Below are positions 3,604 through 64,000 of a stretch of DNA of 64,000 bases, piece by piece. The first letter of the stretch is position 1. Each line of letters begins with the position of its first letter. The stretch is from Sphaerodactylus townsendi (Eukaryota): contig NC_059426.1 in the NCBI RefSeq assembly GCF_021028975.2, positions 88,598,001 to 88,662,000 on the forward strand, in the 5' to 3' direction. Made by a program: the position numbers and the translations under genes. The notes beneath the pieces are model-generated. The model was not told the origin of the DNA and searched no databases. It saw only the letters and a program-made list of their open reading frames with translations.

Positions 3604-3861
3604 TGGGTGAATCTACAAAGCATCTATGAAACAGAGCTGCAGAGCTATGAAGCAATGAATTAATGAAGCATCATTTCAATGAATAAGCAAAAAAAATTTT
3701 AAACCCTCACATTTGGGGGCAGGGAATGCAGACGAACTTCATGGTAAAGGGGGGGGATCAAAAACCTTCTAGGTGACTTGTGAAGAAAGAGCCAGGATTA
3801 AGAAAATTTGAAAAGGAATACTATTCAAGCAGAACAGCTGAAAGGTTAATAGTAGGCATTT

Positions 3862-3915
3862 GAGGAGGAGGAGGAGGAGGAGGAGGAGGAGGAGGAGGAG
3901 GCGGCAGCGGCGGCA
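3862..3915. repeat. (GAG)n followed by (GCG/GCA)n compound microsatellite
   Basis: Direct reading. Confidence 0.9.
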
Positions 3916-5931: not shown

Positions 5932-6172
5932 ATGCCAGCCTCCAGGCGGGGTTTGGGATCCCCCAGAATTCAGCTCTTCTCCAGACTAAATATAGTCGTT
6001 CCCTTGGAGAAAATGGATGCTTTGGAGGGTGGGTTTTATGGCATTGTACTGCACTAAGGTCCCTGACCACCCCAGGATCCATACCTGAATCTTCAGGTGT
6101 TTCCCCAACCTCCACCTGATAACCCTTCCCCTGCATCCCACGCCAGTTGCCAGAAGGGACCTGGCAATTCTA
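5932..6172. mobile_element. Non-autonomous hAT-type element of the TAGGGTTGCCA-ended family (degenerate)
   Basis: gccagcctccagg...ttcccttggagaaaatggatgctttggagggtggg...ctggcaattcta. Related copies at ~36760-36963, ~43595-43645, ~48960-49160 and 50875-51168. Confidence 0.6.
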
Positions 6173-6781
6173 CTATCAAGTGATAATATGACATGGATCT
6201 AAGGAATATTATTAGCAAGCATACTTATGTTTTAAACTATAACAAAAATCAGCATGTGAATAACAAAAATCAAAATATTTAAAGTCACCTTTATATCAAC
6301 AATAAACATTAATTTGTACCTAGACATTTCTCCTTAAATAAATAAGACCAACTAAAATTTTACTTTATGACTTTTGCCCCAGTTCTGTGGTATGTGTGGA
6401 ATGTCGCTTGACCCACGGTTCTTCAGAAATTTCATTGCCAGTGGTGCTTTGGAATTGCACACACAAGGTCAGATTGGTTTGTATCTGAAGGGAAATACAT
6501 AGCTCTACTGAAACAAGTGATCATCACGATGTTTGCAACAGCCCTTTTTCCCTGCAAAAGCACACACACAAAAAAACTAAGGGTGCAAAAATATTGTATT
6601 CTATTGTATTCTACACAAACATTCCAATGCCTTGTATTTCTCCACTCAGGCACTAATGACAATCAAAGACTGACATTCCACAGTATGATAAGAAAAATAA
6701 TAATATCTGAACTGGAAAAATCTCAGCGTGTTCACAATATCTGCCACGCTTTAAAATATGTACCTGTTTCTGCCTTTGGGA

Positions 6782-6975
6782 GAGAGACAGCATGGCATCA
6801 TGGTTAACAGCAGGTGAATTCTACTCTGGGTTTGATTCCCCACTCCTCCACATAAACAGTGGATTCTTGTCTGGTGAACCAGATTTGTTTCCTCGCTCCT
6901 ACACATTTCTGCTGGGTGTCCTTGGGATAGCTACAGTTCTTCAGAACTCTCTCAGGCCCACCTGCCTCACAAGGG
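6782..6975 (+). mobile_element. tRNA-derived SINE (Squam3/MIR-core-like)
   Basis: A-box-like catggcatcatggttaa, B-box-like gggtttgattcccc, body ctgggtgtccttggg...ctctcaggcccacctgcctcacaagg. Other copies at ~24345-24560 (-) and ~32735-32905 (+). Confidence 0.65.
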
Positions 6976-7676
6976 CCCTTTCTGCACAGCACAAATAAGA
7001 AGTCCTGAGGATGGGGAAAAGGCGTCTTGGGGAGGAAGTCTGCACAGATTTTCCCCAAGATGTCATCAGGCCATTTTATTTTAGGGGAGAGGGGGGGAGT
7101 GGGGAGGGAGAGGGAGAGGGAGAGGGAGAGAGAGAGGCGGAGAGAGAGAGAGAGAGCTAAGATACATGTCATAGCCAAAAAGCCTGGGTAGATATGTCAA
7201 ACTTACTCACATAGGTGGATTCCTCACAGCACAAATGTAATGGGCTGAGGAGGGAAAATACGGGGGAAGAACTTTACACAGGTCTCTTCCCGAAAACAGG
7301 CTCAGCCCGTTATATTTATTTCAGCCCAAGTTTTACAAATATCACCAAACTAGCAATCTTTTTGCAAAATCCCAGGTTTCAAATGCTTCCTGCTACCTGT
7401 GCAAGCTATGTCTAATTTCCCCCCCTTCCGTCCAACATTTCTCTAGAGAATCCACTCAAATGGCAGCCACCATGATCAGATGGGGGGAGATTCATGGTCG
7501 CAGGGTAAAGATTCTCAGTTGTGTAGGGGAGGGGAGGATTTCTTGCTGCCCACCATTCAAAGGACCCAAGTATGGGGAGGGGAGGGAGAGAGAGATTTTT
7601 TTCCTTTTCTTGCCTGGGTACTGTTTGGCCACAGAGGTCCTCTACAGGACACATGCATTCTGGGAAGGGGTGAAAA

Positions 7677-7777
7677 CAGTGGTGGGATTTAGCAGGTTCA
7701 CACCACTTTGGCAGAACCGGTTGTTAAAATGGTGCTTGTAAACAAACAGCAGTTAAATTATTTAAATTCCACCACTG
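7677..7777. mobile_element. Small hAT-like MITE
   Basis: TIRs cagtggtgggattt ... aaattccaccactg. Confidence 0.6.
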
Positions 7778-8043
7778 GAACTGGTTGTTAAATTATTTTA
7801 ATCCCACAAATGGGGGGGAAGTGTCTGTGTGAAGGAGCTGCAGCGTTTGCTACTGCTTCCTGAATGGGTAAGCTTTTCATGTTCAAAGGGGAAGAGGGGA
7901 AAATGGGTCCATTTATAATGAGCTACATTTGTTATGAATGAGCTATGCAGAATGCACCATACAGTCATCACTGGTAGTCCAGAATGATTGATTAATTGTG
8001 TGAAACAGGACTCACAAAGTACCACAGATATAGTGGACACTAA

Positions 8044-8160
8044 AGCAGATTTTGCATGGGCCAAAAACAGCAGTGTGAAAATGGTGTAAAAGGGTTTAAA
8101 ATGGAGTAAAAGGGTTTCCACTGTTTTCACACCGCTGTTTTTGGCCCATGAGGAATCCAC
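8044..8160. mobile_element. Degenerate short Harbinger-type MITE
   Basis: gcatgggccaaaaacagcagtgtgaaaa ... ttttcacaccgctgtttttggcccatg is palindromic. Same family as 35434-35549 and 51190-51329. Confidence 0.7.
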
Positions 8161-9019
8161 TGTTATTTTTCAAAGAACATAATTTAATAATTACTTTCAA
8201 ATCATCAGATTATATCTTCATTGCAAATCATTTCTTACTACGAAATACTGAAAAACTAACAAATGTTGCTTCTTGTTCAGGACGTTTCTACCTCTACAGC
8301 AGCAGAAAAGATTTCTCAATAAATTAGAAAACATCCAGATTCGTGACATGAAACAGATGGCCCAAATTAACCTCAAACTGTAGTAAGTTCACATTGTAAG
8401 AAAACCTACCGTAGTCAATCTGGGTTGACCATAGCTAAACTAAATCATCCTGTACTTTTGAAACAGGAAATGTAAACCTCACTGCAAAATATTTATTCTT
8501 ATGCCCTATCCCTGTTCAAGTACAGTGGTGTGAACTATGCGGTTCTTGAGTCACCAGGGCACTCTGACTCTGCAACAGTACCAGGAACCAGGACCAGAGA
8601 GACATTCAGTAACACAGAACTACAGATACAGACAGTTCTGTGCGTAAAGGTGGTAAAGAGACAGCAATGACCTCTAACGAATGACACTGGCTAGGCTTTG
8701 AATTTATGATGATGTATGGTTAGTTAGCATTTGCCTGTAAAATGGAACAAGTTGGTCCCCTCATTTCAACAGCACATATTTCTAGAGGTTCCAGCATCTT
8801 GACCTATGTTTTCCCCCTCCATAATGTCCCAGTGTTCTGTTTTAATGTCCCTCTTATTTTCAAGATTACTTGCATTTCTGTTTTTTCCAGCCTGTCCTTA
8901 CCAATTCTTCTAAAACATTTAGAACATATTTTCCTCTTTACTGATATCTCAAAAATCTAGTTATTTGTCACTTTGCATCTGGGCTATTTCTGACAAATCA
9001 TGACCAAGCCAAACCTATA

Positions 9020-9880
9020 CTGATCTTCTAAATGGTGCATGGAGCCAGCAATGGGCTGGATAAGAGCGAACAAATTGAAATTAATCCTGATGAAAGAGAT
9101 GTTCTCTAGTAGAAAGGCAGACCAAAGACCTGGATGGGGTTATACTCCCCTTGAAAAGCCAGGTTTACTGCTTGACACAGCAGTCACCATAGGAAATCAG
9201 ATGGCTGTGGCAGCTCAGAGTCATTTTGCACAGTTTCAGCTAGTGCTAAGCTTCATACATTCCTGGGTCAGTCAGATCTAGCTTTTGTGATCCATGCCTT
9301 AGTTATAGCTACACTGGGTTACAGTAATACAGTCTACTTGGGGTAACCCTTGAAGAATGTCCAGAAGCTGCAGCTAGTGCAGAATTCTGTGACTAGATTG
9401 CTGGCCAGGGCCAGCTACGGGAGCATGCAACTATACCAATTACACAGGTTACTAATCTGCTCCTGAGCTCAATTCAAGGTGCTTGGTTTGTCCTTCAAAG
9501 CCCTTCATGGCTTGAGACCAGAGTATCTGAAGGACTGTCCTTTTCCCCGATATTCTAGTCCAGGAATTTGGATCACAGGAAAATACCCTCTTGACTGCCC
9601 AACAATCAAAGACGCTCATCTATTTGGCAGCCCTGGATTACGGAACAACCTCCCCAGGGAGATGCGCCTGGCACCCTCACTTTCAATCTTTAGGAGGGAG
9701 TTGAATATAGTTTTATTTAGAACTGCATTTGACTCATTCAGTTTTTATTTATTGGAAATCCTAACTGAAATTTTAAATTGTGGTCTTTGGGGTATTTTTA
9801 TAATCATTTTATTTACATTGTAAGCCACATTGAGTTCTGCAAGATAGAAAAGCTGCTAATAAATGTTTAAAATAAACAAA
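9020..9880 (+). mobile_element. Old L2-clade LINE 3' remnant
   Basis: MGWIRANKLKL (WM..NKLKLN motif), a QKLQLVQN-like segment at 9361-9385, LSFKALHGLRPEYLKD, and a 3' end tgtaagccacattgag...aataaa. Confidence 0.8.
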
Positions 9881-19495: not shown

Positions 19496-21560
19496 GGCCT
19501 ATTCCACATGAACCAATAAACATGGGTTAAGGATGGTAAAAAAACTCGTTGTGGGTGGGAAGTTTGCATGGTTCCCGTCCCTAAAGCAAGTCAGAGCCAC
19601 GTTTTAGCGGCCAAGCCAGATTTTTCAAGAATTGCTGAAAACGCAGTTCTTTTTTTAAAAAAATCATAGCAAGCTGGCATTATGCGAAAGGTCTGGCAGG
19701 AGGCGGGTTTGTTAAGCCCGCCTCCAGCAACGACACCACCACCGGCAGTGGCCATGCTGGGGAGGGAGAACCGTCCCGGCAGCCATGCTGATTGGGTCAG
19801 CCACCCCATGGGCTGCTTCCTGCTGGATAAGCTGCAGGGCTAAATAGGCAGCCCAAAGCATGACCCCAGGGCCACCTTTCTTTATTTTTTTGGCAGGTTG
19901 TCCCTGTGTTGCTATGCAGGGGCACACCTGTGCGTGACTGGCAGAGCGCGACTTTGTTGGCAGTATGGATCGAGGGCCCCTGGAGAGGAGGATTCTTGGC
20001 TCCAAATGTCCAGGCTGGACATGGGCTCTGGGTCCTGGAGATGGTATCTGAGCTGGACCTGGCAGCGTCCACCTGCCAATCCCTCTCCCCCGCCACAAGG
20101 GAGGTCTCCTGGTCTGAGAGGAGTGTCTTGCAGGGAGTAACCAGGAAGTTTGGGAGACCTTGGAGGGTGCATTGGACTTGAGAGGCATTTTCAGGGAGAG
20201 CTGCCCATCGGGGAAGGAGACTGGTCAATGCGGTAAGACTGTGGTGGGGCTCGAGGGGGTCCCTGTCCTACACATGATCTCCACCAGGGAAGGTGATGGA
20301 AGAGCACTAGGGCATGGGGTCACCGGGAGGGATATGGAGACACGAGACCTGCTAGCAATCTGTGGGGAGCCAGCCATCCAACAGGCCTTAGACAGGAGCC
20401 ACTGCAACCTGGATGTCTCTGAGAGGGTGGCTTGAGAGATGAGGCACCTGGACCACCAGCGCACAGCCACAGAATGCCGCACAAAAACCAAAAACATGAG
20501 GCAAGAGTACAAGCGTGTGGTCCAGCACAATAGAGGAACAGGCAACTTGCCCCTTCTACAAGGAGCTGGACCATATACTCAGGTGAGACCAGAGCATCCG
20601 ACCCTTGTGTACTGCCAGAAGCTTCCACCTGAGGGTCAAGGCTGAGCTCAAGTAAGGTCCGTCCAACCAAGCACCAGCCCCATCAGAGCAGGAACCCATC
20701 CCCCAGCCTGGACACATTGTCTACCAGGCCACTACAGGTCCCTCACAGCCTCCCGGATTCAAGTAAGGGGGGAGAGCCCCCCTATCACCTTTTGCCCCCC
20801 CCCCCAGCCTGGGGCAGAGCAACATTCCCAGGAGATCCCAGCCTCATGCAGTCCTCAGACCATGGGAGCCTTGAATGCTTACAGTTCCAGTGGCAGCCTC
20901 TCCCCTGCACTGCAGCTGCAGATAAGGGTAGAGAGCCTCAAGGGGATGGGGATGGGGCTGGCCAGGGCCCATGCAGGCAACTGCTGGCAGAGACTGGAAA
21001 CATGGCTAGGCCCTGACAGCTGCCTGCCCCTGCCCAATGCCAACCACTCCAAAGGGCTCCTATCTCACTGCCGGCATTCTCTGCAGCAGAAGTGACAGCA
21101 ACACAGAACACGGACCCGGATGCCACCCAGATCTGGATATGCCACTAGGGACACAATAGGAAGGACAAGACAAGCACGAGGGGCCACCCCTAGGCAAGGA
21201 CATCTCTCCCTCAGAAACACGGCCTCCCTCACCTCATCAGGGGTGCCATTTTGCAGGCCAGGCCCTTCAAAGCAGAGGAAGGCAGCATTACCCATACTGG
21301 GCACCCGGCCTCCAAGATCATAGAAAAGGCAAGCAGGCTGGTAGAAGCAAGAGCAATGGGAGGCAGATGGGAGGCGGGCTCCTTAGGCTGGAATTAGGGG
21401 TGCTGTTTTTCAGCACTTGCCCATGGCACCAATTTTTGTGGACATGATGACCCTGAGGCACAGTGGTTCCATGCCACTAGCAGAGTCATCACCCCAAGAA
21501 ACCTGTGTTTTTTCTCTTCTGTAGGCTGTTACTGGGAACAAGGAGCCGCAGTAGAGAAAT
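19496..21560 (+). mobile_element. Harbinger-derived element carrying a decayed Myb/SANT (trihelix) gene, no transposase seen
   Basis: Begins with the Harbinger-like end ggcctattccacatg. 20300-20590 encodes RDLLAICGEPAIQQALDRSHCNLDVSERVA*EMRHLDHQRTATECRTKTKNMRQEYKRVVQHN..CPFYKELDHIL. GC-rich block in AT-rich surroundings; right end not resolved. Confidence 0.75.
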
Positions 21561-34577: not shown

Positions 34578-35433
34578 CATGTTATTTGGGGGATTAGAAT
34601 TAACAGGGGTTAATAGGTGCAGTATAGCCTGCTGTATTCCTGCCATCCCAAGTTATAGCCTAACAAGCCCAAAGACCAGACCTATTTATTCCATTGCTGT
34701 GATAACATGAAACAGGCAAAAAAAATGACAGTCATAGGAGTCTCAAAAATTCCTGCTTGTCCCCAAAGCAGCCACCTATTCCCATGTTGCTGTTATAAAG
34801 GGTGAGTTAGTAGCCATTTCCTACAGGGCAAATTACTGCACTAGCCAGCCTGGCCCTGTGCCATACTATTATTCTTCATACAGTTAAAACAAAATGGCAT
34901 TTAACAGAAACAGTTAAAAAAATCAATGGTACATGCCAGCCATAAGAAAACAGTGTGCACCACATTTAACCCATTTTATAGTAGTGAGGCAAAGTGAACA
35001 AAAAGGAGGAGGATAAATACACAAATTCAGGCCAAATGTCATCATGTTTCATAATCATTTATTGCATTTTCAAGATAATTCCTTTTTATTCATGAGTTCT
35101 AACATTAATTCATATTTCTATATGTGGCATATTGTTGCCTTCTGCTTTTGAAGAATTTATTTGTTTAGTTATTACTATGGCTCATAAGATCCAAGAGCTA
35201 TCCTTTCCAGAAATTTGAGTGAGAAAGACTGATTGGATTGGATTCCAGTGAACATTCTAATGTAAAATTAATTTTTCTATTAATTTTCAACCAAAATGAT
35301 AATTGGACATACCCATAACTTATGTATCATACTGGTTGCTTATCTCTCCCAAAACCTATCTGAGTCTAACCCCAATTTAAAGAATCTAGTAGGCATCAAA
35401 TAATAGCAAATATTTTTAATCAAATTAATCTAA

Positions 35434-35549
35434 GGCTGATTCCGCATGGGCCAAAAACAGTGGTGTGAAAATGGTGTAAAAGCAGAGAACAAACCCTTTT
35501 GCACCACCATTTTCACCTGACCCTACTGGCCCATGTGCAGAGATCAACC
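35434..35549. mobile_element. Short Harbinger-type MITE
   Basis: ggctgattccgcatgggcc ... ggcccatgtgcagagatcaacc; TSD TAA/TAA. Confidence 0.8.
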
Positions 35550-51168: not shown

Positions 51169-51189
51169 CCACAGATCTGCCTATACAAA

Positions 51190-51329
51190 GGCTGATTCCG
51201 CATGGGCCAAAAACAGTGGTGTGAAAATGGTGTGAAAATGGTATAAACTCTTTTACATTGCTTTAAACCCTTTTACACCGTTTTCACACCGTTTTCACAC
51301 CACTGTTTTGGGCCCATGCGGAATGAGAC
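51190..51329. mobile_element. Short Harbinger-type MITE
   Basis: ggctgattccgcatgggccaaaaacagtggtgtgaaaa / ttttcacaccactgttttgggcccatgcggaatgagac; TSD AAA. Confidence 0.85.
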
Positions 51330-52501: not shown

Positions 52502-55330
52502 CATGTTGGATAAAAAATCAATTAAAAAACAAAAAATAAATTTTAAAATTTTTAATTTGATTTTTAAAATGAGGAAAAATCTATCTAGAGACAGTTTTCT
52601 ATTTTTAAAACATATTCGAAAAGTCATTCATCATAAAATAAAGGTTAGCTTTTAATTATGTAGCACAAGGCTGCATGTTCCTGCAATGTTTAAAAAATTT
52701 TGATAAATGAATTCTATTAATCCATTCACAGTCTTATGTTTTTCCAGAGATTTCTGTAAGATTTATTGTCGAAGGCTTTCACGGCCGGAATCACTTGGGT
52801 GCTGTGTGGTTTCCGGGCTGTATGGCCGTGTTCTAGCAGCATTCTCTCCTGACGTTTCGCCTGCATCTGCCAGCCACAGATGCAGGCGAAACGTCAGGAG
52901 AGAATACTTTAAGTAACCCTTAACAGGCTCCCCACAGCACCATTCGATAGATTGTTTTGGGCAGTATTCTATCTAGAAGATATTGTCACAGATGTTTGGC
53001 TTTGCATTTCTCAAAACTGAATTTATGACTGCAGAGCCTTCTTCTTCACAGCAAAAAGTTATAAAAAAATAAGTATACAGAGAATAAGTTATACTGAGAC
53101 CCGCTGTTCGCTTTACCAAATCCTATGTACACAGAATCAACTCCTTACCTCTTAAGTGCTAAATTTATAGATCTGCACAAAGAGGAGTTCAGTGTATTGG
53201 GTTCGAGGGACAACAGTAAAAATGAAAGTGAAACCTTTTCAGCAGAATACTCCACAAGTCTTTGATCTTTGTGTGTATTAGCCTGCAGTTTATCAAATTA
53301 TTCTCTCCTTGGAGGAGAAAAATTATAGTGGCAGCAAGCCATAACTCCAGTTTGGGAATATTTTAAATAAGAGAGTGCTTACTCTATCTACTTATAGATA
53401 AGTCAGGCATTTGTGCAAAATTCAAAACTGCAACTAAGAAAATGCAAGACCTAGTGGCCCCAAATGAAACAATAGCATGAGAGGTGCTTTTGATGAAGAG
53501 ATGACAAAAGGAAAATGTTTCAAGAGGCAGGATCTTCCAGGTGGGTAAACATTTTGATCATATTTCTTAAAGACTGACTTGAGGAATTGTCATATTTGAG
53601 CAAAATATATTTGCTATTCTTACTGCATGTTACTGTCATTTTGAATACAGTTATGAAGGAAATAAGAGAGGCTGAAACAATCAAATCTTCTTTGCACTGG
53701 CAATACCAAGTGGCAGCTTAAATACAATGGAGTAATACCAAAATAAGATGAAATGGTATAGATAACAAAATAACAACATGGATTTTTTGTTTGTTTGTTT
53801 TGGGGAATCAATCGTCAACCTAAAGGATTCGAAAACTTACCCAGTTTCGAAGGATCCACCATCCTATTATTCTACAGTTTTCAGAGTTATCTGTTCAGGA
53901 TACATCCATATTCACGAGTATATAGCTTAAAGAAACAAAATCCGACCACCCAGGAGACCATCATGGATAAGTTTGTGATAAAACCAGCAGATTAGAAACT
54001 AGGTAACTGATGATAAAATTGTCCATTTTGTTTATACAACAAAGTCTTCAACTTCCATCTGATTGAAAACCCATACTTAATTAATATGGTTCGGTCATTT
54101 TGAGACCAGGAGACAGTCTACCCAGCAGAGATGATCTTGCAGGGAAATTGCTGAATAAAGTGTTTCGCAACGGCGGAGGCTCACGTGGAAATGTGGCTCG
54201 TGGAATGTGAAGTTTCTGTGCCCGCTGTTAACTAAGAATTACACTTTTTTGTGCCAAGCGCAGCTGCTTGGGTTAAATCTACGGAAGCCACACATAAACG
54301 CCAGCTTAGTGTGAAAAACAGACTACCATCCTATCATCTGCATACAGCGTGGTGGCGTAACTGCAATGCAAAAAAAAGTTTAAAAATAATTTCCCGTCCC
54401 AACTTACCCACGGTGCAACAGCCGAAATCCAGGATGAGGAAAGAAAAGAGCCGCTGAGCAGACTGCGCATTCAATCGCTACGAATCGCATTTAAGGGATT
54501 GCTTCCACCTTCATCTGGTTGTAAATGTAAAAGGTTGTACAAACAAAGAATGTTAATAAAACCAAGAGGGTATAATTTTTTTTGGAATTAATACTTGATG
54601 CAGATGAAATTTGGAAATCCATGTGATCGATAAATGTACCTATTTTATGTTTGTAATCTTTGTAACTTGCTTACATTTGTTCCAAATGGCTTTACTAGAT
54701 ACCTAATAAAATGAATATTAATAAAATTTAAAACTGAAAAAAACAAGTAATAGCTTCTTGGCATTTCTGCCACAATCCATTGGCTGTGAACTTCTTCATT
54801 AGAGACAAGGGGGAACTCTGGGCATTTTGAGGGCCGGGATTAAAAAATAAAACCCTGAAAAAAGAGGGACAGCCAAAGGAATTTGATAATATTATTATGT
54901 TTTGTTTGTTCTGTTAGCTTGTTCTGTCCTTCTCCACTGGGAAGCTGACCTGCTGAATAATATCTATGTTGTGCAGTGGGAAATGCTGCTTGATAAGGTT
55001 TAGCTACTCTTTTCCAGACATTTTGTATGTGAATTGAGTCACGACATGAAGTTTTGCAAACTAAGATAGGCTATGATGTCTTAAATAAAAGATCACTAGT
55101 AAAAAATGAGAAAACTTTTTTCCTTTAAAAAGGCCATTCTACAACTGTGAAAGCTGAAAAAATGCTGGACAGATTATGTTTTTACAGGAAAGTTCACTGT
55201 TATTTGATACTGAGAATATGGAAACCTCAGTACAAATAACCAATGTTAATTGGCTTAATTTGTTAATGATAAAAAAAAGTAGCTGGGTCAGCAACTGAAA
55301 ATCTTTTTGTGATGCAAAGCATATAATACC
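52502..55330 (+). mobile_element. Decayed hAT transposon with transposase remnants
   Basis: 53440-53500 resembles the end of a BED finger (MQ.LV..MKQ.HE.C). 53955-54162 reads TIMDKFVIK..DKI..FVY.T...F.LIENP..INMV.SLRPG.SLPSR.DLAGKLLNKV, a typical hAT N-terminal region. AT-rich subterminal aaaatc repeats near 52505-52570. Boundaries approximate. Confidence 0.65.
52764..52906 (-). mobile_element. Penelope-like element terminal (pLTR) fragment in inverted arrangement
   Basis: gatgcaggcgaaacgtcaggagagaatgc...ggccatacagcccggaaac..gtgaaagccttcgacaa resembles squamate Penelope ends; perfect 29-bp inverted repeat 52841-52869 / 52877-52905. Confidence 0.75.
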
Positions 55331-55959
55331 ATAAATAATTTGACATTGGTCCATTTCCACATAACACAAATAAAATGTGTTTACGCAGACATTGGAAGTT
55401 TTCGCGCACACTGTTTGTTGCAGATCTGTGGCATGTGAGGTCGTCGCGTTATCGCACATCTGTTAAGCACACTTAAGCAGAAATATTGTGCCGGCCCCTT
55501 TTGTGCCACATTCAGCCGTTGTTCCATTTTTTTCCGCAATAAACGATACTTGCATTACGCTTTTGGGAAGCGCCCAGTTTCCCCAAATTTAGTGCCTGGT
55601 CGCGAAACAAATGTGGGCGAAAGTGGATCGAAGCGCGGGGTTTCGCCAGCGTGGCGAGATTTGATCCATCAATGGGAGTCTGACGGAAGCGTTCTGGCTG
55701 TAGCGCTTTATTCCTTTGTTCCCATTTTGCATCTTTCGCCTCCCCTCATACCCGTTGATGGTAATGCGCTTGCATTTCGACCGAGCCCTCGTGGCCCGTT
55801 GCCGCGATGATGATATTTGCTTAGCCGCGGTGACTCGTCAGCTCGTTTCCTGCCCACGTTACGCTTGGCGTAGCGTTTGAGATACCGTTAGCGGGATGGG
55901 AGAAAACCGGCCTTACAAACAATGCGACGCCATTTTGAATTAGGGTCCGGGCCGAGTAT

Positions 55960-57870
55960 TATCATGGCGGCAGGAGAGCGAAGGACCTCGTGCCGTGTGG
56001 GGAAGAGGATTCAGCGCTCGCTAAGTCTCGTGCCGCAACGGGCGTGTTTGAGAGGGTGGCAGATCAAATCGCGAAAGGGGCACAACAGGGCGTCCGTTGA
56101 AGTGCAGGGCGAAGAGGCAAAGACTTTGAAAAGGACTTTAAGCGAGATACCAGCACAACAACACTTCAGGGAATGGGCTCGGGCGATGCCCTTCTATGAG
56201 GAGCTTCGAGCAGATGTTAGGGGGGGACGGGGCGATCAACCCCGCGCGTAAAGCTCGGAACAGAAGTCGCGTCGTGACGCTATACGGAAGCCGCTGACGC
56301 GAAATTCCACCAAAGCGTTAGGGAGCAAGACTTACAGAACCATAAGGCGCAGAGATACCTGCAGGGGTTTCGCCCCGTCCACCTACATCCGAGGGGTAGG
56401 GATTTTTCCTATACTTCGCACGATACCCCGGATGGCGCTTGCTCTGTTATTACCTCTCTTGTGATGGGGCACTCAGATACGCTTCACTTCTGGAGTTAGT
56501 TTAACGTGGTCGCTCATGTCCTATTTCTCTGCCAGGTGGATGTGCAGAAATGTACATTCCAGCTGTCGCTGTTGTTGCACAGTGCAGTGGACTGGGTGAA
56601 TCCTCGAATTCTCCCCTCTCTCCTCCTTTGGTCGCGGGTTCTGCGCAGCTACTGAACTTATGCGGCTTTTAAGCCAACGGTTTCCACCTCAGGAGAATCA
56701 ACCGTTCTCAGAGGGCCGTGCCGCCAGATCTATGTAATGCGCCCAGATGAGTGGTGGTTCATTGGCTGTTTAGCCTGCTGGTGTAGGCCATGCTTTGTGA
56801 GGTGTTCCCCGACATCCCTCCATCACAGTCGTCGCCAAAAGTGGGGACAGGTTAAGGGCACAGCTGTTCTTGATGGAATTTGCCTGGTGGGTTCAATGGA
56901 CATGCAGGAGCAATGGTCCCTCACAGGCGTGGGCATGTGAGAATTGACCACAACAGGATGCCTCTTAGCCATTGCATGTTAAGTGCTGCGTGTCTGCGCC
57001 CTGCCAGGGTGGTGTTGCTGCTGGAAACGGTGTCGCGACCAAATTACCCTGCGGGCGCTCAGCACTCTGGCAGCAGGTAACGTCAAAAGGAAGAAAAGTG
57101 ATGATGTGACCTCATGTTCTTTCTCCTTCATGGCAGCTCTCTTTGCAGACCTCTGGTGACATGAATGAAAGTGTCCTTGACCATCCTATTGCTGGAGTTC
57201 TGTAGTGCAAATGAAGGTGCGTTGAAACCACAAACTGAAACCCCGCAGCGATTTTGTGGTAGGCGCTCTGAGGCATAGGACAACCCGCTCCATTACTTAC
57301 GACAAAGAGGAAGACAGCATGCCCGCCAAAAGTGGGCTGCTCGTGCACAGATGCCCGCACAGGCTCACTGCTTGATTCGCCAATGGCAGATGCTGAAGTG
57401 CGGTCAGCAACATGCAAACCCTGGGATGCCTATGCAGATCTGCTCATGTGCTCAACAAGAAAGTGTATCTCCCGCCATGCGAGCTAGGGTAGATGACGGT
57501 GGATTCATAAAAGTTCCTTCCATCACCTGGCGATTAATTGTGCGTCTATCAACAGCGATGTCCTCTTACAGGCTGCACATCTCTGACGATGATGGAACTG
57601 ACTTCACCAGAGCGGAGAATGACTGCTGACGAAGTGTCGCGGCGTGTTAAGTGCACCGGCTGACTTTTGCGAAGGCCATGGTGGAACAGGGAGAGTCGAG
57701 GCAATGGAAGGCCGAGGATAGGCGGGGAAAAGGAGGTAAGCGTCATTCATGCAGAGCGGCGCAGAGCAAACAGGGAGCTGTCATCGCTGAGGCTGGCCAT
57801 CGACAGGGGAATGACATAATGCAGACCCTTGTGGCAGCGGCTTTGCTGCAGCGCATGGGCTCCTCGGTGT
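55960..57870 (+). pseudogene. Harbinger Myb/SANT (trihelix) DNA-binding gene 1, spliced and frameshifted as sequenced
   Basis: Joining frames at 55960-56225 gives WRQE..KDL.AVWG..IQRSL..RNG.VFERVADQ..KGHNRASVECR.KAKTLK..F....HN.SG....MPFYEEL. A downstream acceptor tcctcttacag| at 57570 is followed by a charged coiled-coil segment (AKAMVEQGE..QWKAEDR). Confidence 0.75.
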
Positions 57871-58199
57871 AGGGGTGCTGGGGTTCATTGCGGTAGCCCT
57901 CTGCTCCTCGCGATGCATCACAAACCTTGCCTGCCCCAGCGTTCAGCAGTGCCTGCCCACTTGTGAAATTGCTGGCCCGGCTGCAAATCTCGTGGAAGTC
58001 ACGGCCGAGGTGACTTATCCACTCTGGCTGAGGACACCGACTTGGAGTCTATTGGTAGGCCAGCCTTCCATCACAGGTGGAGACCTGATGATGGTTGGGA
58101 GACACCTCTGAGCTGTGCTGCACTCAGGTGGCTTGCCAGAATCACAGCCAATGCACAAGCGGCAGGGAAGCCCAAAGCAGAATGGACCTGTGAGGACCT

Positions 58200-58838
58200 C
58201 CCCTGTTATTTCTCTGTCTGCACCACCACGGGCAAGCCCCTTCTATTACATAGGTTAGCTAGCGATGCGTTTAGGCATCAGAGTTAAATTTGTTTAATAT
58301 TTTTAAAACAGGCTACACATGGCTGCCCTCTCAGGTAGGTTGCCAGGAGAGGATGGTCATGGAAAGCAGACAATCCTCTGCTGCGAAGATGTAACCAGCC
58401 AGCTGACCCACCCACCCACCCACCCTTGTTTTCTCTGTCTCTGCCACGCGGTGAGCCCCAGCTTTTACATAGGCTAGTGATGATGTCGCGTTTAAGCATC
58501 AAAAGGTTAGTGGTTTTAATATTTTAAAAGGAGCTACACGTGCCTGCCCTCTGTGGTAGGTTGCCAGGAGAGGATGGTCATGGAAAGCAGACGATCTCTG
58601 CTTTGCAGAGATGTAACCAGCTTAAAGCGACCCACCCCTGTTTTCTCTGTCTGCCACCTGCGGCAGGACCCCCTGCTTTATAGGCTACCGAGTGATGTGC
58701 GTTTAAGCATCAGAGTTTAATTTGTTTTATGTTTTATAAAAGCGTTATACATCACCTGTCCTCTCAGGTTGGTTGCCAGGAGAGAGGAAGGTCATGGAAA
58801 GCGAACAATCCTCTGCTTTGCAGAGATGCGTAACCAAT
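58200..58838. repeat. About three tandem copies of a ~215-bp unit inside the Harbinger element
   Basis: gcgttta(a/g)gcatca at 58268, 58488 and 58699; ggttgccagga...ggtcatggaaagc recurs three times. Confidence 0.85.
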
Positions 58839-58951
58839 AGCGATAATAAACCATATGCACAAGCATTTGTGAAAGTACAATTGCCTTTATTGTGTGATTT
58901 AAGCAATGCATTTACAGCTAAGACAACTTTAAGGGGCCTTGGGGAGATGGG

Positions 58952-60975
58952 TTAGGAAGTTTGGTGCTTGTTTCGCTGGATGCCGCGCCATGTGGTTTTG
59001 CCTGCCTTCTCTGCAGCCCTCCGCTGCCAGAAGGAGCCTCTGGCGGCCCCTTCCCTCCTGTTCATCCCATACTCCAGCCACAGCCAGCCTGCGCTCAGAT
59101 CCTGTCTGAAGAGTGGAAGATATAACACAGTGAAAAATTTAGATGATGCAAGTGGCGGAGTCTGGTTCCTGCTGTGTGTCCCCTTCAAATCTTCAGTACC
59201 GCCAAGCCATCCCGCTCCATGCAGAAAAGTTCTGCTGCCATAACCCGCTTAAAACAACCCCGGCCAGTTTTCCATGCTCACAGTTGGCATCCAGCGATGG
59301 CTCTGTCTGAGTGCCAACTTCTGCATGTCGTGGTTTCTGTTGCAGAAGCCCTGCGTGGTTAGAGCCCCCTCTGTGTCCTAGACATTCCTTGCAAACATGG
59401 AGGGTGCAGAGCCAGTTAGCATTTGAAGATGCGTGACACAACTCTCAGTAACATGGGCAGCGTTGGCATCCAGCGGCAACACCCTTCCCAAAGAACGCAC
59501 TGGCACTCACCAGGGTAGGCTTACCTCATCTTCACTGCACTGCACCTGGGTGGCCCCGGCTCACTCTCCTCCTTGGTTTTGGTGGTGGGCAGAAGCTGCT
59601 CCTGAAGGGAATAGGGATGCATGGCTTTACAGCTCCAGATAGCCACATACATCTAATTTTAAATTAAGCTCTCTCCCACATCCAACAGAGCCCCTGCTGT
59701 CCCTGAACAGGAGGCCCGCATGTGGGGCTCCCACCAGACAAGCGTAGGCGTGGCACACTGAATGCAAGTTCCCCCTATGTCTGCTTTCTCAAGTTTGTAG
59801 TTCTTAAAAGTTTGCCTTAGACTCCACACATCAAGTTTCTCAAGGTGGGGCGAGGAATATGGTCGCTCTTCAAAGCGTCGCTGTTGGTTAAAGTGTAATA
59901 ACCTTTCTGCGTTGATGGGAGGTAAACTTTAGCGGCAATGCAAGCAGCAGGGAGAGCAGAGTGGCCTGAAACACTCACGTCTGTCGCGCTCCACCATGAT
60001 TTAAATATTTTGCAGCTAGACCATAAAAGGCCAAGACTGAGAGCATGCATGGCCGGAGATAAGCGGTGCTCACATGCCAGCTTTAATTTGCATGACTTCA
60101 AAGGGAAGTGGTAAGGGAAAGAGGAGAAAGAAGTGTGTGCCCTCCGGCCTTCCTCTACTGCAGCATGCTCAAAGGGCATCACATTCCCTCTCCTTGCCCA
60201 CCCTCAGGGCTACGCTTGGCGTGGTTGGATCAGACGCTTTAAATGCTAAGGGCTGGCCAAAGTAAACACAGCAGTACATTTGGGCTTGTTCATGAGAACC
60301 TGGATTGACAAGGTGAGGTTTCACATCACCAGCCGCACGCGTTGGGGGGGGGCCGCGCTTACTGACCGGGGAGTGGTCTGGCTCTGGCTGTTAACCTCGT
60401 CCACGGCTGCACGGTGCTCATTACTGCCTGCAATTTTAGCACCGTTCACACAGTCACACCTCTAATCGTTGTGCTCAAGCAGACCCATTGCAGCAGGGTG
60501 CTCTGTACTAAAGTAGAAGTCACACTCCTTCAAATAAACTCACAATCTCACTGATTGGTTGGTTCTCCAGTGGTGCTCAGATTAAAGCTAGCAGGTGCAT
60601 TTGAAACCAGAAACTGGTTTGTGCTGCAAGAGCATGCTGTGGAAAATTACCAAACTCACCCCCCTTCATTTCGATGTCTGCGCAGGGGACACCAGCCTTC
60701 AGCCAAGCCTGCATGAGGGAGTAGTGCTTTGGCCTCCCAGCGGCAGCTTGGTTCTCCACACTGAGGCAGCTCTCAACTTTAAGTACTCTTTTTTTGGCTT
60801 TCCACTTGTTTTGAATCTGAGTAGGGCTCATTGTGTCCTCCTTGCCATGGCCTTGCTGAGGCCGGAGTATATTTTCCTGTTGGGGCCTTCGCTACCACCA
60901 CCAGGTTAGCCACCCTGCTGATCACAGACGGTATCATCGCCTCCACCTCCTCTTCCGACCAGTTCACGAGAGGGC
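58952..60975 (-). pseudogene. Harbinger Myb/SANT gene 2 (divergent subtype), multi-exon and frameshifted as sequenced
   Basis: NWSEEEVEAM..VISR...EGPNRKIYSGLSKAMARR...SPTQIQNKWKA.K...GRPKHYSLMQ.WLKAG at 60967-60660; donor gtgagt at ~60655; candidate exons ~60310-60425, 59525-59601 (ttcag| ... |gtaagc) and 58952-59101 (coiled coil, stop). Confidence 0.7.
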
Positions 60976-61669
60976 GACATATCGACCCTTCAAAGGTGCT
61001 CCACTGTTACTGAGGAATTTGATACAGAATTACGAGAGGAGGGGATGGGCCATGAGAGCCCTTTTGAAGAGCGCCTTGGAAGGGCAGCCCTAATAGTGAG
61101 CTAACGGGAAGAAAAACGACGCGTGACGTTGCATGTTTAACCCGGAACTTCCTGTCCCTCATGCGCACAGGCTGTAAAACTGCTGTTAGAGTGCTCCAGC
61201 AAACAAGCATCCATGGATTACGCCAACAGGAGTCTGGCAGTGTCTATGAACTTCAGTGCACAGTCTCACTTAAGGCCTCACTGTTGCATACCTCACTTAA
61301 TAATACAATTTTAGCCAGCGTTTATAGAGTCGGGGGGGCTGTCGCGGCCCATCTTGGAGCTTGCCGAGGGACCATTGAATTCCGAGGTGATTCCCGTACA
61401 AACCACCGCGCATCTTTTTTCACGCCTCCCAAAGGTAGCACCGTGCGCCACTAATCAACTCATGAGACGAATTTCCTTTAGCAATTGAAAGGTGGTTCCT
61501 GCCCTGGATGCTGTCTCAAGTGTGAGTGAATTGGAGATGTGTGGTAGAATTGAAGACCGCGGCGTGTAGGTTTGTTTATCAGTGGAAAAAACTTTATTCT
61601 CGGAAAATAAAAAAAATTTTTGCACATTAGCACACACACCAATGATGCAAGACATGAACGGAGAGGAGA

Positions 61670-63865
61670 CTACTGCTGCACAGGGCGGTTGCAGTAGAGG
61701 TAGGTGGCCAGGGCATTTCTCACAGCCTTCCCCTTGCCAGATGCTGATCCTCAGGATAGGACCCTCACCTGAGCCAATTATGATGGGCTGCTGCTCTCTT
61801 CCATCTGAGTTAGCGAGGGGGGCCAGTCCGCCATTCACTCTCGGAGAGTCTGATTTTCCGGCCATGGGTTGTGTAGAACAACACAAGTGGCAGCAGGAGT
61901 TAACCCTCTCCACCCTTATGGGCAACTTGTGCTTACAGGCACTTCCACCATCCTTTAATGCGTAAAGGCAGCTCCACAACACATCTGGCCTGCTCATTCT
62001 TCTGTTGTGCAAGTGGCTCTATCGCGTTCATTGGATGAGTAGCTGGCTTTACAACCACCTCGCATGGGAATCGCCATCCATCAAAATCAGCGATTGGGAC
62101 AGCCAGCGTGAATGGACAATACAGGGTTAACTGGGAAGAAGGCACCCTGTCATGGCCTGTTAGTGTGAAATGGCAACCCTGAAAATGTCTTGGCGTCGTG
62201 GCTTCTGCGGGGCCAATGTCCACCTCAAAGGTGCGATAATGCATGAAGCAGCCCGCCACCAAGAACAATGGAGGCCACCCTCTTCCTGTTGATGTAGTCC
62301 GCAGAAGGCGTCCGATGGAGTTTTAAGTCTGTGAATAATGGCACCATCAATTGCTCGAAGCGCCAGCGGAAGCCTATGTTAACGATCCCGGCGCACTTAA
62401 CCTGGAGGTTGTTTGGGAAAAACAGACAGTTAGTGTCGCCATTGCTCTGTGTCTCTGGACATGACGGGGTGAGGCACATGAAGTCGCTATGGGGCCGATT
62501 CTGCAGGCATGCCTTATGGCGCTTCTCTCCTCATCAGAGATCTTGCTCTGAATTTTCTTCGTTTCCTCTCTTCTCTCTATTTTAATACAGAAAAGCGGGA
62601 GGGCAATTGGCTGAATGGCCCTCCTGGATTAAATCTGGGCCGATCCTGTACGCCCAGCACTGCCAGGACAGGCCCCAGTTTAAAAAAAGATGCTGCGCGC
62701 AAATTCACCCATAAGCCTGCCTGGGTTGTGGTTTGCCCGATGCCACAGCAGCTGTATCAATACGAGTGGTGCAATGCCAGGCTTAGCGAGCATATAGGAG
62801 TGAACAATAGGTGAAACCATTTACTAAGATACTCAAATCACGAAAACAAATTAAGTAGCGCCATATCTGCCTCAACCCCTCACGATCACGGTGAGGATAT
62901 CTGCCCCTGGGTGGAACCTTCCCAGCCCTTCACTCCAAACTGGCCCCAGAATGTTCAACATTTTGCCCCTCTCTGACCTGGCGCTTTTACAGCTCCTTTT
63001 CTTCCAAAATTAGATATGCATACCCACAATTCCTGGGCCGGTCCGCTCTGGGTTGAACGGCGCAAAAGGCGCATCCGATAGCGTTGTTGAAGCCTACCAC
63101 CCGCAGGGGTAGCCTCCCGTCATTTGAATAAAAAATAAAGAAAGGGGAACATGTGTCCCCGCGCCTGGACTCTGTGTAATCAAACTCCAGAAAATTGAAA
63201 CTGTACCTCAAGGGCCACCAGACCCAAAGAGACACGCACCCAAAAGTGAGAGTGTGCACGACTGGTAGCACTATCAAACCATGTCAGCCTACCTTCTCCA
63301 CTGGATCATAAAACCCGGACAACCCTCTTGAACAGGATGTTCCTTCCGAAAACTCACAGAATTCATGGACAGCCTCGGCGGTGGTGGTGCCTCAAACTGC
63401 TGCCGCTTTTATCCCACGAAGGAGTTAGGACTGGCCAGATACCAAATAGCCATCCCCATACATCACCCGAACACTTCCTTGCGCCATCGCGTGTGTCTTA
63501 GGCCTCGAGAAACGGTGCTAGGCTGTCAACGATCCTCTGAACGTTCCTCTGCTCATCACGGAAGTTCTTGAGCCATTCCTCATCGTTCCATGATGACCAC
63601 GCGGATGCCACCACCAGTCCTGCTACGGTGCGGGTACGCAAGCGGTGGAAATTACCGCAGGCAACCGGCGGACCCGCAGCCTAAGCCCACTGACCGAAAG
63701 TGCGAAGCCTGCGCGGCAAACTATCATGCACATCGTGCCGTGCATGAAGGCTTTGTCTTGGCAGACCGACCCTCGTCCAGTGGCGCAGAAGCGTCACAAC
63801 CAGAAGCAGCTCTGTCTCCTCCTGGTAGTCCGAGGCATTCGCGACCCTGATGGCTTTTCCATCGA
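61670..63865 (-). pseudogene. PIF/Harbinger (HARBI1-like) DDE transposase, two exons, frameshifted as sequenced
   Basis: Exon 1 (ends at 63293, AAG|gtaggc): WNDEEWLKNFR.SRGTF..IVDSLAP..MAIWYLASPNS. Exon 2 (starts at 62401, ccag|): AIDG, ADYINRK..ASIVL, HD.RV, GDS, ARCVVE..KGWWKCL, CVVLHN, GKAVRNALATYL. AATAAA on the minus strand at 61593-61598. Confidence 0.88.
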
Positions 63866-64000
63866 ATATTATGCCCACAAAGCAGTTCATGTAGCAAAAG
63901 CGGGCGCTAGTGAGGGCAACCTACCTATGAGTAGCAGTACCTCGACTCCTTGGTAGCGAGAACTTCGAGGCTCACGATATGAAATGGCGGCGAGATCGCG

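What the first reader, a model, noticed from the sequence alone, without database searches (positions are those of the whole stretch)
55400..64000. Three-gene PIF/Harbinger transposon: transposase plus two different Myb/SANT genes
Seen: a spliced Harbinger DDE transposase (-, 61670-63865), a co-oriented multi-exon Myb/SANT gene (-, 58952-60975) and a second, clearly divergent Myb/SANT gene (+, 55960-57870), all in one continuous CpG-rich block with no internal TIR/TSD that I can find. Established: canonical PIF/Harbinger elements encode one transposase and one Myb/SANT protein that binds subterminal motifs and recruits the transposase. Inference: this is a three-component Harbinger, where the second Myb could bind the other end, act as a heterodimer partner or repressor, or counter host silencing.
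Basis: partly seen in the sequence, partly recalled or inferred. Interest (0 to 1): 0.82.

Follow-up and report, generated by a model that had tools for sequence, protein, structure and literature searches.

The report
Harbinger transposon with two Myb genes
This stretch is most of a 9.3-kb gecko Harbinger "jumping gene" that carries its cutting enzyme plus two different Myb/SANT DNA-binding genes, where published Harbinger elements have one; the same three-gene set recurs in young, mobile elements of a second gecko.

Summary

- **What the window holds.** Window 55,394-64,000 is 8.6 kb of a ~9.3-kb PIF/Harbinger element; the window ends about 343 bp short of its right end.
- **The complete copy.** A Sphaerodactylus townsendi contig (L003) carries the same insertion, with the identical flank junction. 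There one pair of ~30-bp terminal inverted repeats (TIRs) and a 3-bp target-site duplication (TSD) enclose three genes:
  - a two-exon DDE_Tnp_4 transposase;
  - a three-exon Myb_DNA-bind_4 gene ("Myb1", 200 aa);
  - on the other strand, a four-exon Myb_DNA-bind_4 gene ("Myb2"), only 30% identical to Myb1.
- **No internal boundary.** The TIR motif occurs only at the two ends.
- **Broken frames are technical.** The window copy has more than 130 frameshifts, but its non-transposon flank has the same indel density, substitutions are strand-asymmetric and no CpG is lost. This fits nanopore gap-fill error, not decay.
- **Other families.** Two further Harbinger families in Eublepharis macularius, with copies 99-99.99% identical, also carry a transposase plus one Myb of each class. 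One family (11.35 kb) shows TIRs and TSDs at three loci.
- **Function of Myb2.** Unproven. A complex prediction gave weak support for its C-terminus touching the transposase N-terminus.
- **Earlier scan result.** The scan reported the same architecture before on other DNA of this genome (s1-745854).
- **Verdict.** New variant of a known kind.

The parts
55391..55393 (.). Target-site duplication, left copy (ATT on the + strand, which is AAT in L003 orientation)
   Evidence: The flank ...GCAGACATT| is identical to the L003 flank at its Myb2-side end. The L003 element is flanked by AAT on both sides.
55394..55424 (+). Left terminal inverted repeat (GGAAGTTTTCGCGCACACTGTTTGTTGCAGA)
   Evidence: It aligns to the L003 TIR at 9360-9330. 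The L003 TIR pair is 37 nt long and 92% complementary (I1). The motif TTTTCGCNCACAC occurs only at the two ends of L003.
55896..58193 (+). Myb2 gene (class-2 Myb/SANT). Exons at 55,896-56,397, 56,670-56,752, 57,121-57,224 and 57,571-58,193. The frame is broken many times in the window.
   Evidence: Coordinates were mapped from L003. tblastn of L003 ORFs onto the window gave hits in all three frames. The intact exon 1 (L003:8314-8844, - strand) hits PF13837 at E=2.6e-20. Exon structure comes from mapping P0087.
58199..58895 (.). Tandem array of ~221-bp units between the 3' ends of Myb2 and Myb1
   Evidence: Repeat families D10 and D12 in the window and D1 in L003 at 5520-6404. Contigs L001, L002 and L004 all end inside it.
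58952..60980 (-). Myb1 gene (class-1 Myb/SANT, 200 aa in intact copies). Exons at 60,980-60,658, 59,388-59,283 and 59,103-58,952. The frame is broken in the window.
   Evidence: A window piece hit P0001 (S. townsendi, PF13837) at E=2.6e-10. P0008 (200 aa) hits PF13837 at E=1.1e-15. tblastn of P0008 onto the window and the coordinate map place the exons.
61670..63862 (-). Harbinger DDE transposase gene (443 aa in L003). Exon 1 at 63,862-63,287 and exon 2 at 62,399-61,670, with a ~0.9-kb intron. The frame is broken in the window.
   Evidence: The L003 gene call at 521-2775 carries DDE_Tnp_4. The exon 2 ORF hits PF13359 at E=4.2e-32. The window aligns to L003 over 59,258-64,000 and the coordinates come.
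55394..64000 (-). The element as far as the window holds it: 8,607 bp of about 9,325 bp. The last ~343 bp, including the right TIR, lie beyond the window end.
   Evidence: Window position 64,000 corresponds to L003 position 379, and the element starts at L003 position 36.
52877..55390 (.). Host flank, not part of the element. It is shared with contig L003 up to the same junction, which shows that window and L003 are the same insertion.
   Evidence: 97.7% identity at substituted positions, but 97 indel events in 2.4 kb.

Best explanation
**What it is.** Window 55,394-64,000 is one copy of a young, multi-copy PIF/Harbinger cut-and-paste DNA transposon of the gecko Sphaerodactylus townsendi, or a very close relative. 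The window's flank and insertion junction match an S. townsendi contig. The window lacks the last ~343 bp of the element. The full element is about 9.3 kb, has ~30-bp TIRs (GGGCGTTTTCGCACACACT...) and makes a 3-bp TSD.

**Its three spliced genes.**
- A DDE_Tnp_4 transposase.
- A class-1 Myb_DNA-bind_4 protein (Myb1), co-oriented with the transposase.
- A class-2 Myb_DNA-bind_4 protein (Myb2) on the other strand. It has an N-terminal Myb/SANT domain, an acidic linker, and a C-terminal helical region ending in a basic tail.

**Shown here.** All three genes sit inside one TIR/TSD-bounded unit. One Myb of each class travels with a Harbinger transposase in three element families of two gecko families, with different gene orders.

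**State of the window copy.** Its many broken frames are mostly sequencing error from low-coverage nanopore gap filling, not decay. The accurate contig for the same locus has intact genes.

**Inferred mechanism.** By analogy with zebrafish Harbinger3_DR, the transposase cuts and pastes the element. At least one Myb protein binds subterminal DNA, binds the transposase and carries it into the nucleus. I think it most likely (about 50%) that both Myb proteins are working parts of the transposition complex. In that case Myb2's C-terminal region would contact the transposase N-terminal region. The alternative is that one of them is a passenger.
For: **One bounded unit in S. townsendi.**
- L003 is a whole contig of 11,772 bp. 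NCBI calls three genes on it: Tnp at 521-2775 (+, 443 aa, DDE_Tnp_4), Myb1 at 3467-5467 (+, 200 aa, PF13837), and a third gene at 6463-7972 (-).
- The uncalled upstream ORF at 8314-8844 (-) is a clean Myb_DNA-bind_4 domain (E=2.6e-20). It joins the called exons in another copy's protein, P0087.
- The TIR pair lies at 36-66 and 9330-9360, with AAT on both sides.
- The transposase-side end is precise in four contigs whose flanks are unrelated.
- L001, L003 and L004 are 98.5-99.9% identical.

**Window and L003 are the same insertion.** The flank junction is identical and 2.5 kb of flank aligns.

**The window's damage is technical.**
- Indel events are about 0.6-0.8 per substitution in the element, and outnumber substitutions in the flank (97 events against 55 substitutions in 2.4 kb).
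- A>G changes number 117 against 37 for T>C.
- CpG count is 375 in the window against 372 in L003.
- 31+38 frameshifts fall in the transposase CDS alone.
- The assembly paper reports about 6.6 Gb of ONT reads used by TGS-GapCloser on a 10X assembly (10.1101/2021.08.13.456260).

**Recurrence in Eublepharis macularius.**
- Family Em-1: six loci share at least 12.9 kb at 98.8-99.9% identity, holding MybA, Tnp and MybB.
- Family Em-2: three loci share 11.35 kb at 99.9-99.99% identity. TIRs read GG[C/T]TGAATCCACA and TSDs are CAT, CAT and TTA. The unit holds a Myb1-like gene, a Myb2-like gene (P0067) and an intact Tnp.

**Two Myb classes.** They split with 100/99 support, and each element has one of each.

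**Complex prediction.** Myb2 C-terminus against Tnp exon 1 plus Myb1 scored 0.59, with the best of 3 controls at 0.01. Replacing Tnp exon 1 gave 0.00 (weak support only).

**Literature.** PMC9710019 states that all PIF elements known in plants and animals have two genes, and summarises the Harbinger3_DR mechanism.
Against: - **Thin sampling of the Myb2 side in S. townsendi.** The Myb2 side with its TIR is seen at only one locus, although in two independent representations (window and L003). The other contigs break in the 221-bp array.
- **Myb2 could be a captured gene.** Class-2 Myb genes also exist without any transposase nearby in the same genome (L011 and L015). St_Myb2 groups with one of them.
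- **A two-gene relative may exist.** In Sceloporus I found only a class-2 Myb next to a Harbinger transposase, with no class-1 hit. Two-gene relatives may therefore suffice for transposition.
- **No functional data.** No RNA or read data could be obtained, so neither expression nor function of Myb2 is shown.
- **Weak complex result.** The pass is of a kind the tool calls more often wrong than right unless the pairing was already likely. Partner pLDDT was only 44-50, and the runs agreed in as little as 7% of contacts.
- **No end-specific motifs.** No end-specific subterminal motif sets were found.
Confidence: 0.85

Rival explanations
1. Myb2 is a passenger. A host Myb/SANT gene, or the Myb gene of another Harbinger, was captured inside the element. 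It is carried along but plays no part in transposition.
For: - Class-2 relatives are very numerous in squamates: 2,797 hits at E<=0.001, with names such as MSANTD2/7 and ZSCAN29-like.
- At least two S. townsendi class-2 genes have no transposase within 10 kb (L011 and L015).
- St_Myb2 is sister to one of these (97/94 support).
Against: - A class-2 gene with an open frame is kept in three element families whose transposases are only ~44% identical.
- It is present in every young full copy seen: 6+3 loci in E. macularius.
- In Sceloporus a class-2 Myb is the only Myb detected beside a Harbinger transposase.
- There is weak predicted contact with the transposase N-terminus.
Confidence: 0.2
2. The block is two elements: an ordinary two-gene Harbinger (transposase plus Myb1), with the + strand Myb gene belonging to a separate nested or adjacent element.
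For: - A 221-bp tandem array separates Myb1 from Myb2, and assemblies break there.
- Only one S. townsendi locus shows the Myb2 side.
Against: - The only two copies of the TIR motif in L003 lie outside all three genes, and the same 3-bp TSD flanks them.
- The window, built from long reads, and L003, built from linked reads, independently show the same contiguity.
- Em-2 moves as one 11.35-kb unit with TSDs at three loci. Em-1 moves as one unit of at least 12.9 kb at six loci.
Confidence: 0.03
3. The window copy is a truly dead, decayed relic, and its frameshifts and stops are real mutations.
For: - Relative to L003 there are more than 130 frameshifting indels and 5 new stops in the coding exons.
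- Pfam finds nothing in the window pieces.
- The earlier scan report on another copy in this genome called that copy dead.
Against: - The same indel density is present in the non-transposon flank.
- The indel-to-substitution ratio is far above what neutral decay gives.
- Substitutions are strongly strand-asymmetric.
- There is no net CpG loss: 375 against 372.
- Contig L002 has a similar patch and shares 28 "variants" with the window, which is what systematic error would produce.
- The assembly filled gaps with about 3x ONT coverage.
- The accurate contig for the same junction has intact genes.
Confidence: 0.1

Closest known systems
Harbinger3_DR (zebrafish), the reconstructed reference animal Harbinger
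   Same: It has a DDE_Tnp_4-type transposase, a separate Myb/SANT-like gene, short TIRs and a 3-bp TSD. Its Myb-like protein binds the transposase, is needed for nuclear co-localisation, and binds a subterminal motif (as summarised in PMC9710019).
   Different: It has one Myb-like gene. The gecko elements carry two, of deeply diverged classes (30% identity; split 100/99). They are also larger, at 9.3 kb to more than 13.8 kb.
PIF / Ping / Pong elements of plants (ORF1 plus TPase)
   Same: Same superfamily and the same two-component logic, in which a Myb-like ORF1 is required together with the transposase. The transposase exon also hits Plant_tran (PF04827) at E=8.6e-15.
   Different: These are two-gene elements with a TTA/TAA target preference. 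The TSDs here are AAT, CAT, CAT and TTA, and a second Myb gene is present.
HARBI1-NAIF1 and MSANTD/ZSCAN20-type host genes (domesticated Harbinger proteins)
   Same: Class-2 Myb2 belongs to the same Myb_DNA-bind_4 world as genes that NCBI names MSANTD2/7-like and ZSCAN29-like in squamates. PMC9392472 lists ZSCAN20 as putatively Harbinger-derived.
   Different: Those are single-copy host genes without TIRs. Here the genes lie inside TIR/TSD-bounded, multi-copy, near-identical elements.
Earlier scan finding s1-745854 (16.8-kb three-gene Harbinger block, same genome)
   Same: Same architecture (transposase plus two different Myb/SANT genes), and the same statement that it recurs in other geckos.
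   Different: It concerns different DNA. That copy was called dead, whereas here the apparent decay is shown to be largely assembly error and the element's ends and TSD are defined. The iguanian case I looked at showed only a class-2 Myb plus a transposase.

Membership tests
PIF/Harbinger superfamily (DNA transposon) | Transposase with a DDE_Tnp_4 (PF13359) catalytic domain | tested here: met
   L003:1894-2772 hits PF13359 at E=4.2e-32, 111 bits against a cut-off of 24.8. The window aligns to this gene over its whole length. The window pieces alone give no Pfam hit because of frameshifts.
PIF/Harbinger superfamily (DNA transposon) | Catalytic D, D, E residues present | tested here: met
   Read directly in the intact ORFs: GAIDGCHI, LILADGAFP and VVERAFGRLKGRW in L003; GAIDGTHI, VIADGAYP and VVECSFGRLKARW in Em-2. 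The assignment is by motif inspection and the full-length Pfam match, not by structure.
PIF/Harbinger superfamily (DNA transposon) | 3-bp target-site duplication | tested here: met
   AAT on both sides in L003. CAT, CAT and TTA on both sides in L012, L013 and L014. The classical TWA consensus is met by only one of these four.
PIF/Harbinger superfamily (DNA transposon) | Short terminal inverted repeats | tested here: met
   L003 arms at 30-66 and 9330-9366 are 92% complementary. The left arm is present in the window at 55,394-55,424. The right arm lies outside the window.
PIF/Harbinger superfamily (DNA transposon) | A second, separate gene for a Myb/SANT-like DNA-binding protein | tested here: met
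   Met twice. Myb1 (P0008) hits PF13837 at E=1.1e-15 and Myb2 exon 1 hits PF13837 at E=2.6e-20.
Canonical two-gene Harbinger architecture | Exactly two genes (transposase plus one Myb-like) | tested here: not met
   Three genes lie inside one TIR/TSD unit in L003 and in Em-2. PMC9710019 states that all known PIF elements have two genes.
Active (autonomous) element | Intact ORFs and near-identical copies at different loci | tested here: met
   L001, L003 and L004 are 98.5-99.9% identical with unrelated flanks. Em-2 copies are 99.9-99.99% identical. Actual transposition was not tested. The window copy itself cannot be judged because of sequence quality.
Functional requirement for both Myb proteins | Each Myb needed for transposition, or binding the ends or the transposase | not testable with these tools
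   The only result is a weak in-silico hint: 0.59 against a best control of 0.01.

The most novel reading that the evidence does not exclude
In a clade of gecko Harbinger transposons, transposition needs three element-encoded proteins. The two anciently diverged Myb/SANT proteins would be non-redundant subunits. For example, one might tether the transposase through its C-terminal helices and carry it into the nucleus, while the other reads the subterminal DNA or regulates the complex. On this reading the three-gene set has been kept by selection across element families whose transposases are only ~44% identical.
Probability: 0.35. Interest if true: 0.7.

Novelty: new variant of a known kind. 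Interest (0 to 1): 0.55.

Why it matters
PIF/Harbinger is the textbook two-protein DNA transposon. A 2022 paper states that all known PIF elements have two genes (PMC9710019).

A lineage in which young, apparently mobile elements always carry a second, very different Myb/SANT gene raises a clear and testable question: what does an extra sequence-specific DNA binder add to a cut-and-paste machine? Candidate answers are end discrimination, regulation, nuclear import and escape from silencing.

It also bears on squamate gene evolution. The class-2 Myb family has thousands of relatives in lizards and snakes, including host genes named MSANTD-like or ZSCAN29-like. These elements are a plausible living source for such domestications.

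The intact S. townsendi and E. macularius copies are ready-made material for a transposition assay.

There is also a practical point. This stretch of the assembly is indel-ridden gap fill, so pseudogene calls made on it are unreliable.

Tried and rejected
- **Pfam on window pieces.** Twenty stop-free pieces gave no meaningful hit, because frames switch every 10-20 codons.
- **PDB sequence search.** Two window pieces gave nothing.
Window 55,892-56,248 in frame 0 had no relatives. The ORF is largely an out-of-frame artefact.
- **Sequencing runs.** None was listed for the block, so read laying could not be used. There is no RNA, junction or depth evidence.
- **First working reading, "old decayed copy with CpG decay".** Rejected after comparison with L003.
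- **L002 as an older subfamily, with the window sharing ancestral states with it.** Rejected. L002's differences sit in one indel-rich patch and the rest of it is identical to L003, so the shared "variants" are systematic errors.
- **The 2.5 kb left of 55,394 as part of a giant element.** Rejected. The TIR and TSD sit at 55,391-55,424, and the homology beyond them is the shared host flank.
- **Search for end-specific or repeated subterminal motifs.** Only one extra TIR-core copy turned up, about 60 bp inside the Myb2-side end. The result is inconclusive.
- **Look-ups not on record.** P0001, P0062 and P0095 returned nothing.
- **Right end of family Em-1.** Not reached, because the 10-kb flank limit stops short; the element is longer than 13.8 kb.
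- **Literature.** Searches for a Harbinger with two Myb genes or a third ORF found none. This covers the searchable corpus only; Repbase was not available.
- **Complex prediction.** The verdict was weak support: score 0.59 against a best control of 0.01. That mark was reached by 51 of 78 solved complexes and 2 of 108 mismatched pairs. At 0.60 or under, however, it was reached by only 5 of those 78 and by all 4 mismatches that passed. The runs agree in at least 7% of contacts and partner pLDDT is at least 44.
- **Spliced models.** Joined spliced protein models were not built or searched.

Full report
**1. What is in the window**

From about 55,400 to the window end the sequence changes from GC 0.35-0.42 with CpG o/e 0.28 to GC 0.52 with CpG o/e 0.63. 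Frames switched every 10-20 codons, and Pfam found nothing in 20 stop-free pieces. One Myb1 piece (60,580-60,891, - strand) did find a relative. It was a 142-aa Sphaerodactylus townsendi protein with PF13837, at E=2.6e-10. Its full-length cluster mates (P0004, P0008; 190-200 aa) are a multi-copy family in that gecko.

**2. The intact sister sequence**

P0008 is encoded on three small S. townsendi contigs.

- Contig L003 (11,772 bp) aligns to the window from 52,877 to 64,000.
- On L003, NCBI calls a 443-aa DDE_Tnp_4 transposase (521-2775, +), the 200-aa Myb1 (3467-5467, +), and a 251-aa gene with no Pfam hit on the other strand (6463-7972).
- Upstream of that third gene, an ORF at 8314-8844 (-) is a clean Myb_DNA-bind_4 domain (PF13837, E=2.6e-20).
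- Another copy's protein (P0087) joins this exon to the called exons, giving a four-exon gene.
- Myb1 and Myb2 share only 30% identity over 71 residues.
- The transposase has two exons. The second hits DDE_Tnp_4 at E=4e-32, and the D, D, E motifs are present.

**3. One element, with ends**

- The motif TTTTCGCNCACAC occurs in L003 only at 41-53 (+) and 9343-9355 (-).
- The arms GGGCGTTTTCGCACACACT[T/G]TTTGTT[C/G]CAGA are inverted repeats, and AAT flanks both. The element is therefore L003 36-9360, 9,325 bp, and encloses all three genes.
- The transposase-side end is sharp in four contigs with unrelated flanks.
- In the window the left TIR is at 55,394-55,424, preceded by ATT and by the same flank sequence as in L003.
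- Window position 64,000 corresponds to L003 position 379, so the right 343 bp are missing from the window.

**4. The window copy looks broken, but the damage is technical**

Window and L003 share the insertion junction and 2.5 kb of host flank, so they are the same insertion. They nevertheless differ in ways that point to sequencing error.

- There is about one indel event per 18-25 nt, in the flank as well as in the element.
- Indel events run at 0.6-0.8 per substitution in the element and outnumber substitutions in the flank.
- Substitutions are strongly strand-asymmetric: A>G 117 against T>C 37.
- The CpG count is unchanged: 375 against 372.
- L003 is nearly identical to L001 and L004, with 3-54 mismatches in 4.4 kb, and has open frames. 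The errors therefore lie in the window.
- Contig L002 has a similar indel-rich patch and is otherwise identical to L003.
- The 28 "variants" that the window shares with L002 are therefore systematic errors.

The S. townsendi assembly paper describes a 10X Supernova assembly whose gaps were filled with about 6.6 Gb of ONT reads by TGS-GapCloser (10.1101/2021.08.13.456260). That fits. I conclude that the window is S. townsendi or a very near relative. I also conclude that the true copy at this locus cannot be called dead from this sequence.

**5. Does the three-gene set recur?**

A full HMMER search with Myb2 exon 1 found 2,797 relatives, spread across squamates.

- **Eublepharis macularius, family Em-1.** A 385-aa class-2 protein (P0177) lies at 10 or more loci. 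Six loci on four chromosome records share at least 12.9 kb at 98.8-99.9% identity. They start at a sharp end (GAGTTATTTCACACTCACACTT) with unrelated flanks. The unit holds MybA (+), a 430-aa DDE_Tnp_4 gene (-) and a second PF13837 gene, MybB (+). The far end lies beyond the 10-kb flank limit.
- **Eublepharis macularius, family Em-2.** This family, found through P0067, is complete. Three loci share 11,349 bp at 99.9-99.99% identity, with TIRs GG[C/T]TGAATCCACA and TSDs CAT, CAT and TTA. The unit holds a Myb1-like gene (-), a Myb2-like gene (+) and an intact two-exon transposase (-).
- **Divergence between families.** Transposases are ~44% identical between the S. townsendi family and each E. 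macularius family, and class-2 domains are 40-54% identical.
- **Two Myb classes.** A maximum-likelihood tree of 17 Myb domains splits into two classes with 100/99 support. St_Myb1, Em-1 MybB and Em-2 Myb1-like fall in one class. St_Myb2, Em-1 MybA and Em-2 P0067 fall in the other, together with other squamate genes. The tree is unrooted, its branches are long, and resolution inside class 2 is poor.
- **Gene order.** It differs among the three families, so this is not one nested insertion copied around.
- **Class-2 genes without a transposase.** Two S. townsendi class-2 genes have no transposase within 10 kb (L011, L015).
- **Iguanian case.** A Sceloporus locus has a class-2 exon 3.5 kb from a frameshifted Harbinger transposase, with no detectable class-1 gene.

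**6. How it most likely works**

Established for the superfamily, as summarised in PMC9710019:
- both proteins are needed for transposition;
- the Harbinger3_DR Myb-like protein binds the transposase;
- that binding is needed for nuclear co-localisation;
- the Myb-like protein recognises a subterminal 9-bp motif.

By analogy, the gecko transposase excises and reinserts the element, making 3-bp TSDs. The flanks suggest a loose palindromic AC-NNN-GT target. At least one Myb acts as its DNA-binding and import adaptor.

Both Mybs end in basic clusters that look like nuclear localisation signals. This is by eye, and is an inference.

For Myb2 I ran one complex prediction, with Tnp exon 1 product plus Myb1 plus the Myb2 last exon, and Myb2 as the scored partner.
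- The verdict was weak support: score 0.59 (runs 0.28, 0.65, 0.59) against a best control of 0.01.
- Replacing the Tnp chain while keeping Myb1 gave 0.00. I read this as the predicted interface being with the transposase N-terminal part.
- By the tool's calibration, the mark was reached by 51 of 78 solved complexes and 2 of 108 mismatched pairs. At 0.60 or under it was reached by only 5 of those 78 and by all 4 passing mismatches.
- The runs agree in at least 7% of contacts, and partner pLDDT is at least 44.
- This is a lead, not evidence of binding.

Searches for end-specific subterminal motifs were inconclusive.

**7. Comparison with what is known**

All defining Harbinger features are met: a DDE_Tnp_4 transposase, short TIRs, a 3-bp TSD and a separate Myb-like gene. 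The two-gene architecture is not met. Four full-text searches found no report of a Harbinger with two Myb genes or a third ORF. PMC9710019 says that all PIF elements known in plants and animals have two genes. Repbase could not be consulted.

The scan itself has reported this architecture before, on other DNA of this genome (s1-745854). I used that note as a lead. I confirmed its gecko claim independently, but only partly its iguanian claim.

**8. Limits**

- No sequencing run was listed, so there is no expression or read-level check.
- Joined spliced proteins were not built or searched; every search was exon by exon by reference.
- No contig was taken for human, and no N stretch was filled.

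**Verdict**

This is a new variant of a known kind, of moderate interest, with a clean experimental follow-up.

Noticed in passing
window 52,877-64,000 (and L002:6345-~9100): This stretch behaves like unpolished nanopore gap fill. It has about one small indel per 18-25 nt, even in single-copy flank, with strand-asymmetric substitutions and an unchanged CpG count. Pseudogene calls made on such stretches of this assembly are unsafe.
   Followed up: yes
window 58,199-58,895; L003:5520-6456: A tandem array of ~221-bp units (3-4 copies, 71-95% alike) sits between the convergent 3' ends of Myb1 and Myb2. Three S. townsendi contigs break inside it. Its function is unknown.
   Followed up: partly
window 20,298-20,552 (+): A second, broken class-2 Myb/SANT coding remnant lies far from the element. 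It is 49% identical to Myb2 exon 1 over 85 aa (E=4e-24). It may be a relic of another element or a host gene fragment.
   Followed up: no
window 972-2,051; L002:2-3524; L004:1-355 and 9138-9495; L011 several places: An unrelated repeat family is shared at 87-94% identity between the window and several S. townsendi loci. In L004 the Harbinger copy is inserted right next to it.
   Followed up: no
L016:38,666-43,529 (Sceloporus undulatus): A class-2 Myb exon lies convergent with a frameshifted Harbinger transposase 3.5 kb away, inside an intron of a large SH3/RhoGEF gene. NCBI models it as a 756-aa protein spanning 30 kb. No class-1 Myb was detected.
   Followed up: partly
L011:13,170-15,458 and L015:10,001-14,231 (S. 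townsendi chromosome CM037616.2): Class-2 Myb/SANT genes (P0038, P0082) have no transposase within 10 kb. One lies among TRIM/RING genes. They are candidates for domesticated Harbinger Myb genes.
   Followed up: partly
L003:30-35 and 9361-9366; L001, L002 and L004 flanks: The flanks of independent insertions resemble each other (..TTGAC/TTCAC/TTTAC + NNN), and the L003 target reads GAC-AAT-GTC. This suggests a loosely palindromic target preference rather than the classical TWA.
   Followed up: partly
window 8,042-8,157; 35,432-35,492; 51,188-51,327: Short palindromic MITE-like repeats (GATTCCGCATGGGCCAAAAACAG...) occur several times in the window. They are unrelated to the Harbinger TIRs.
   Followed up: no
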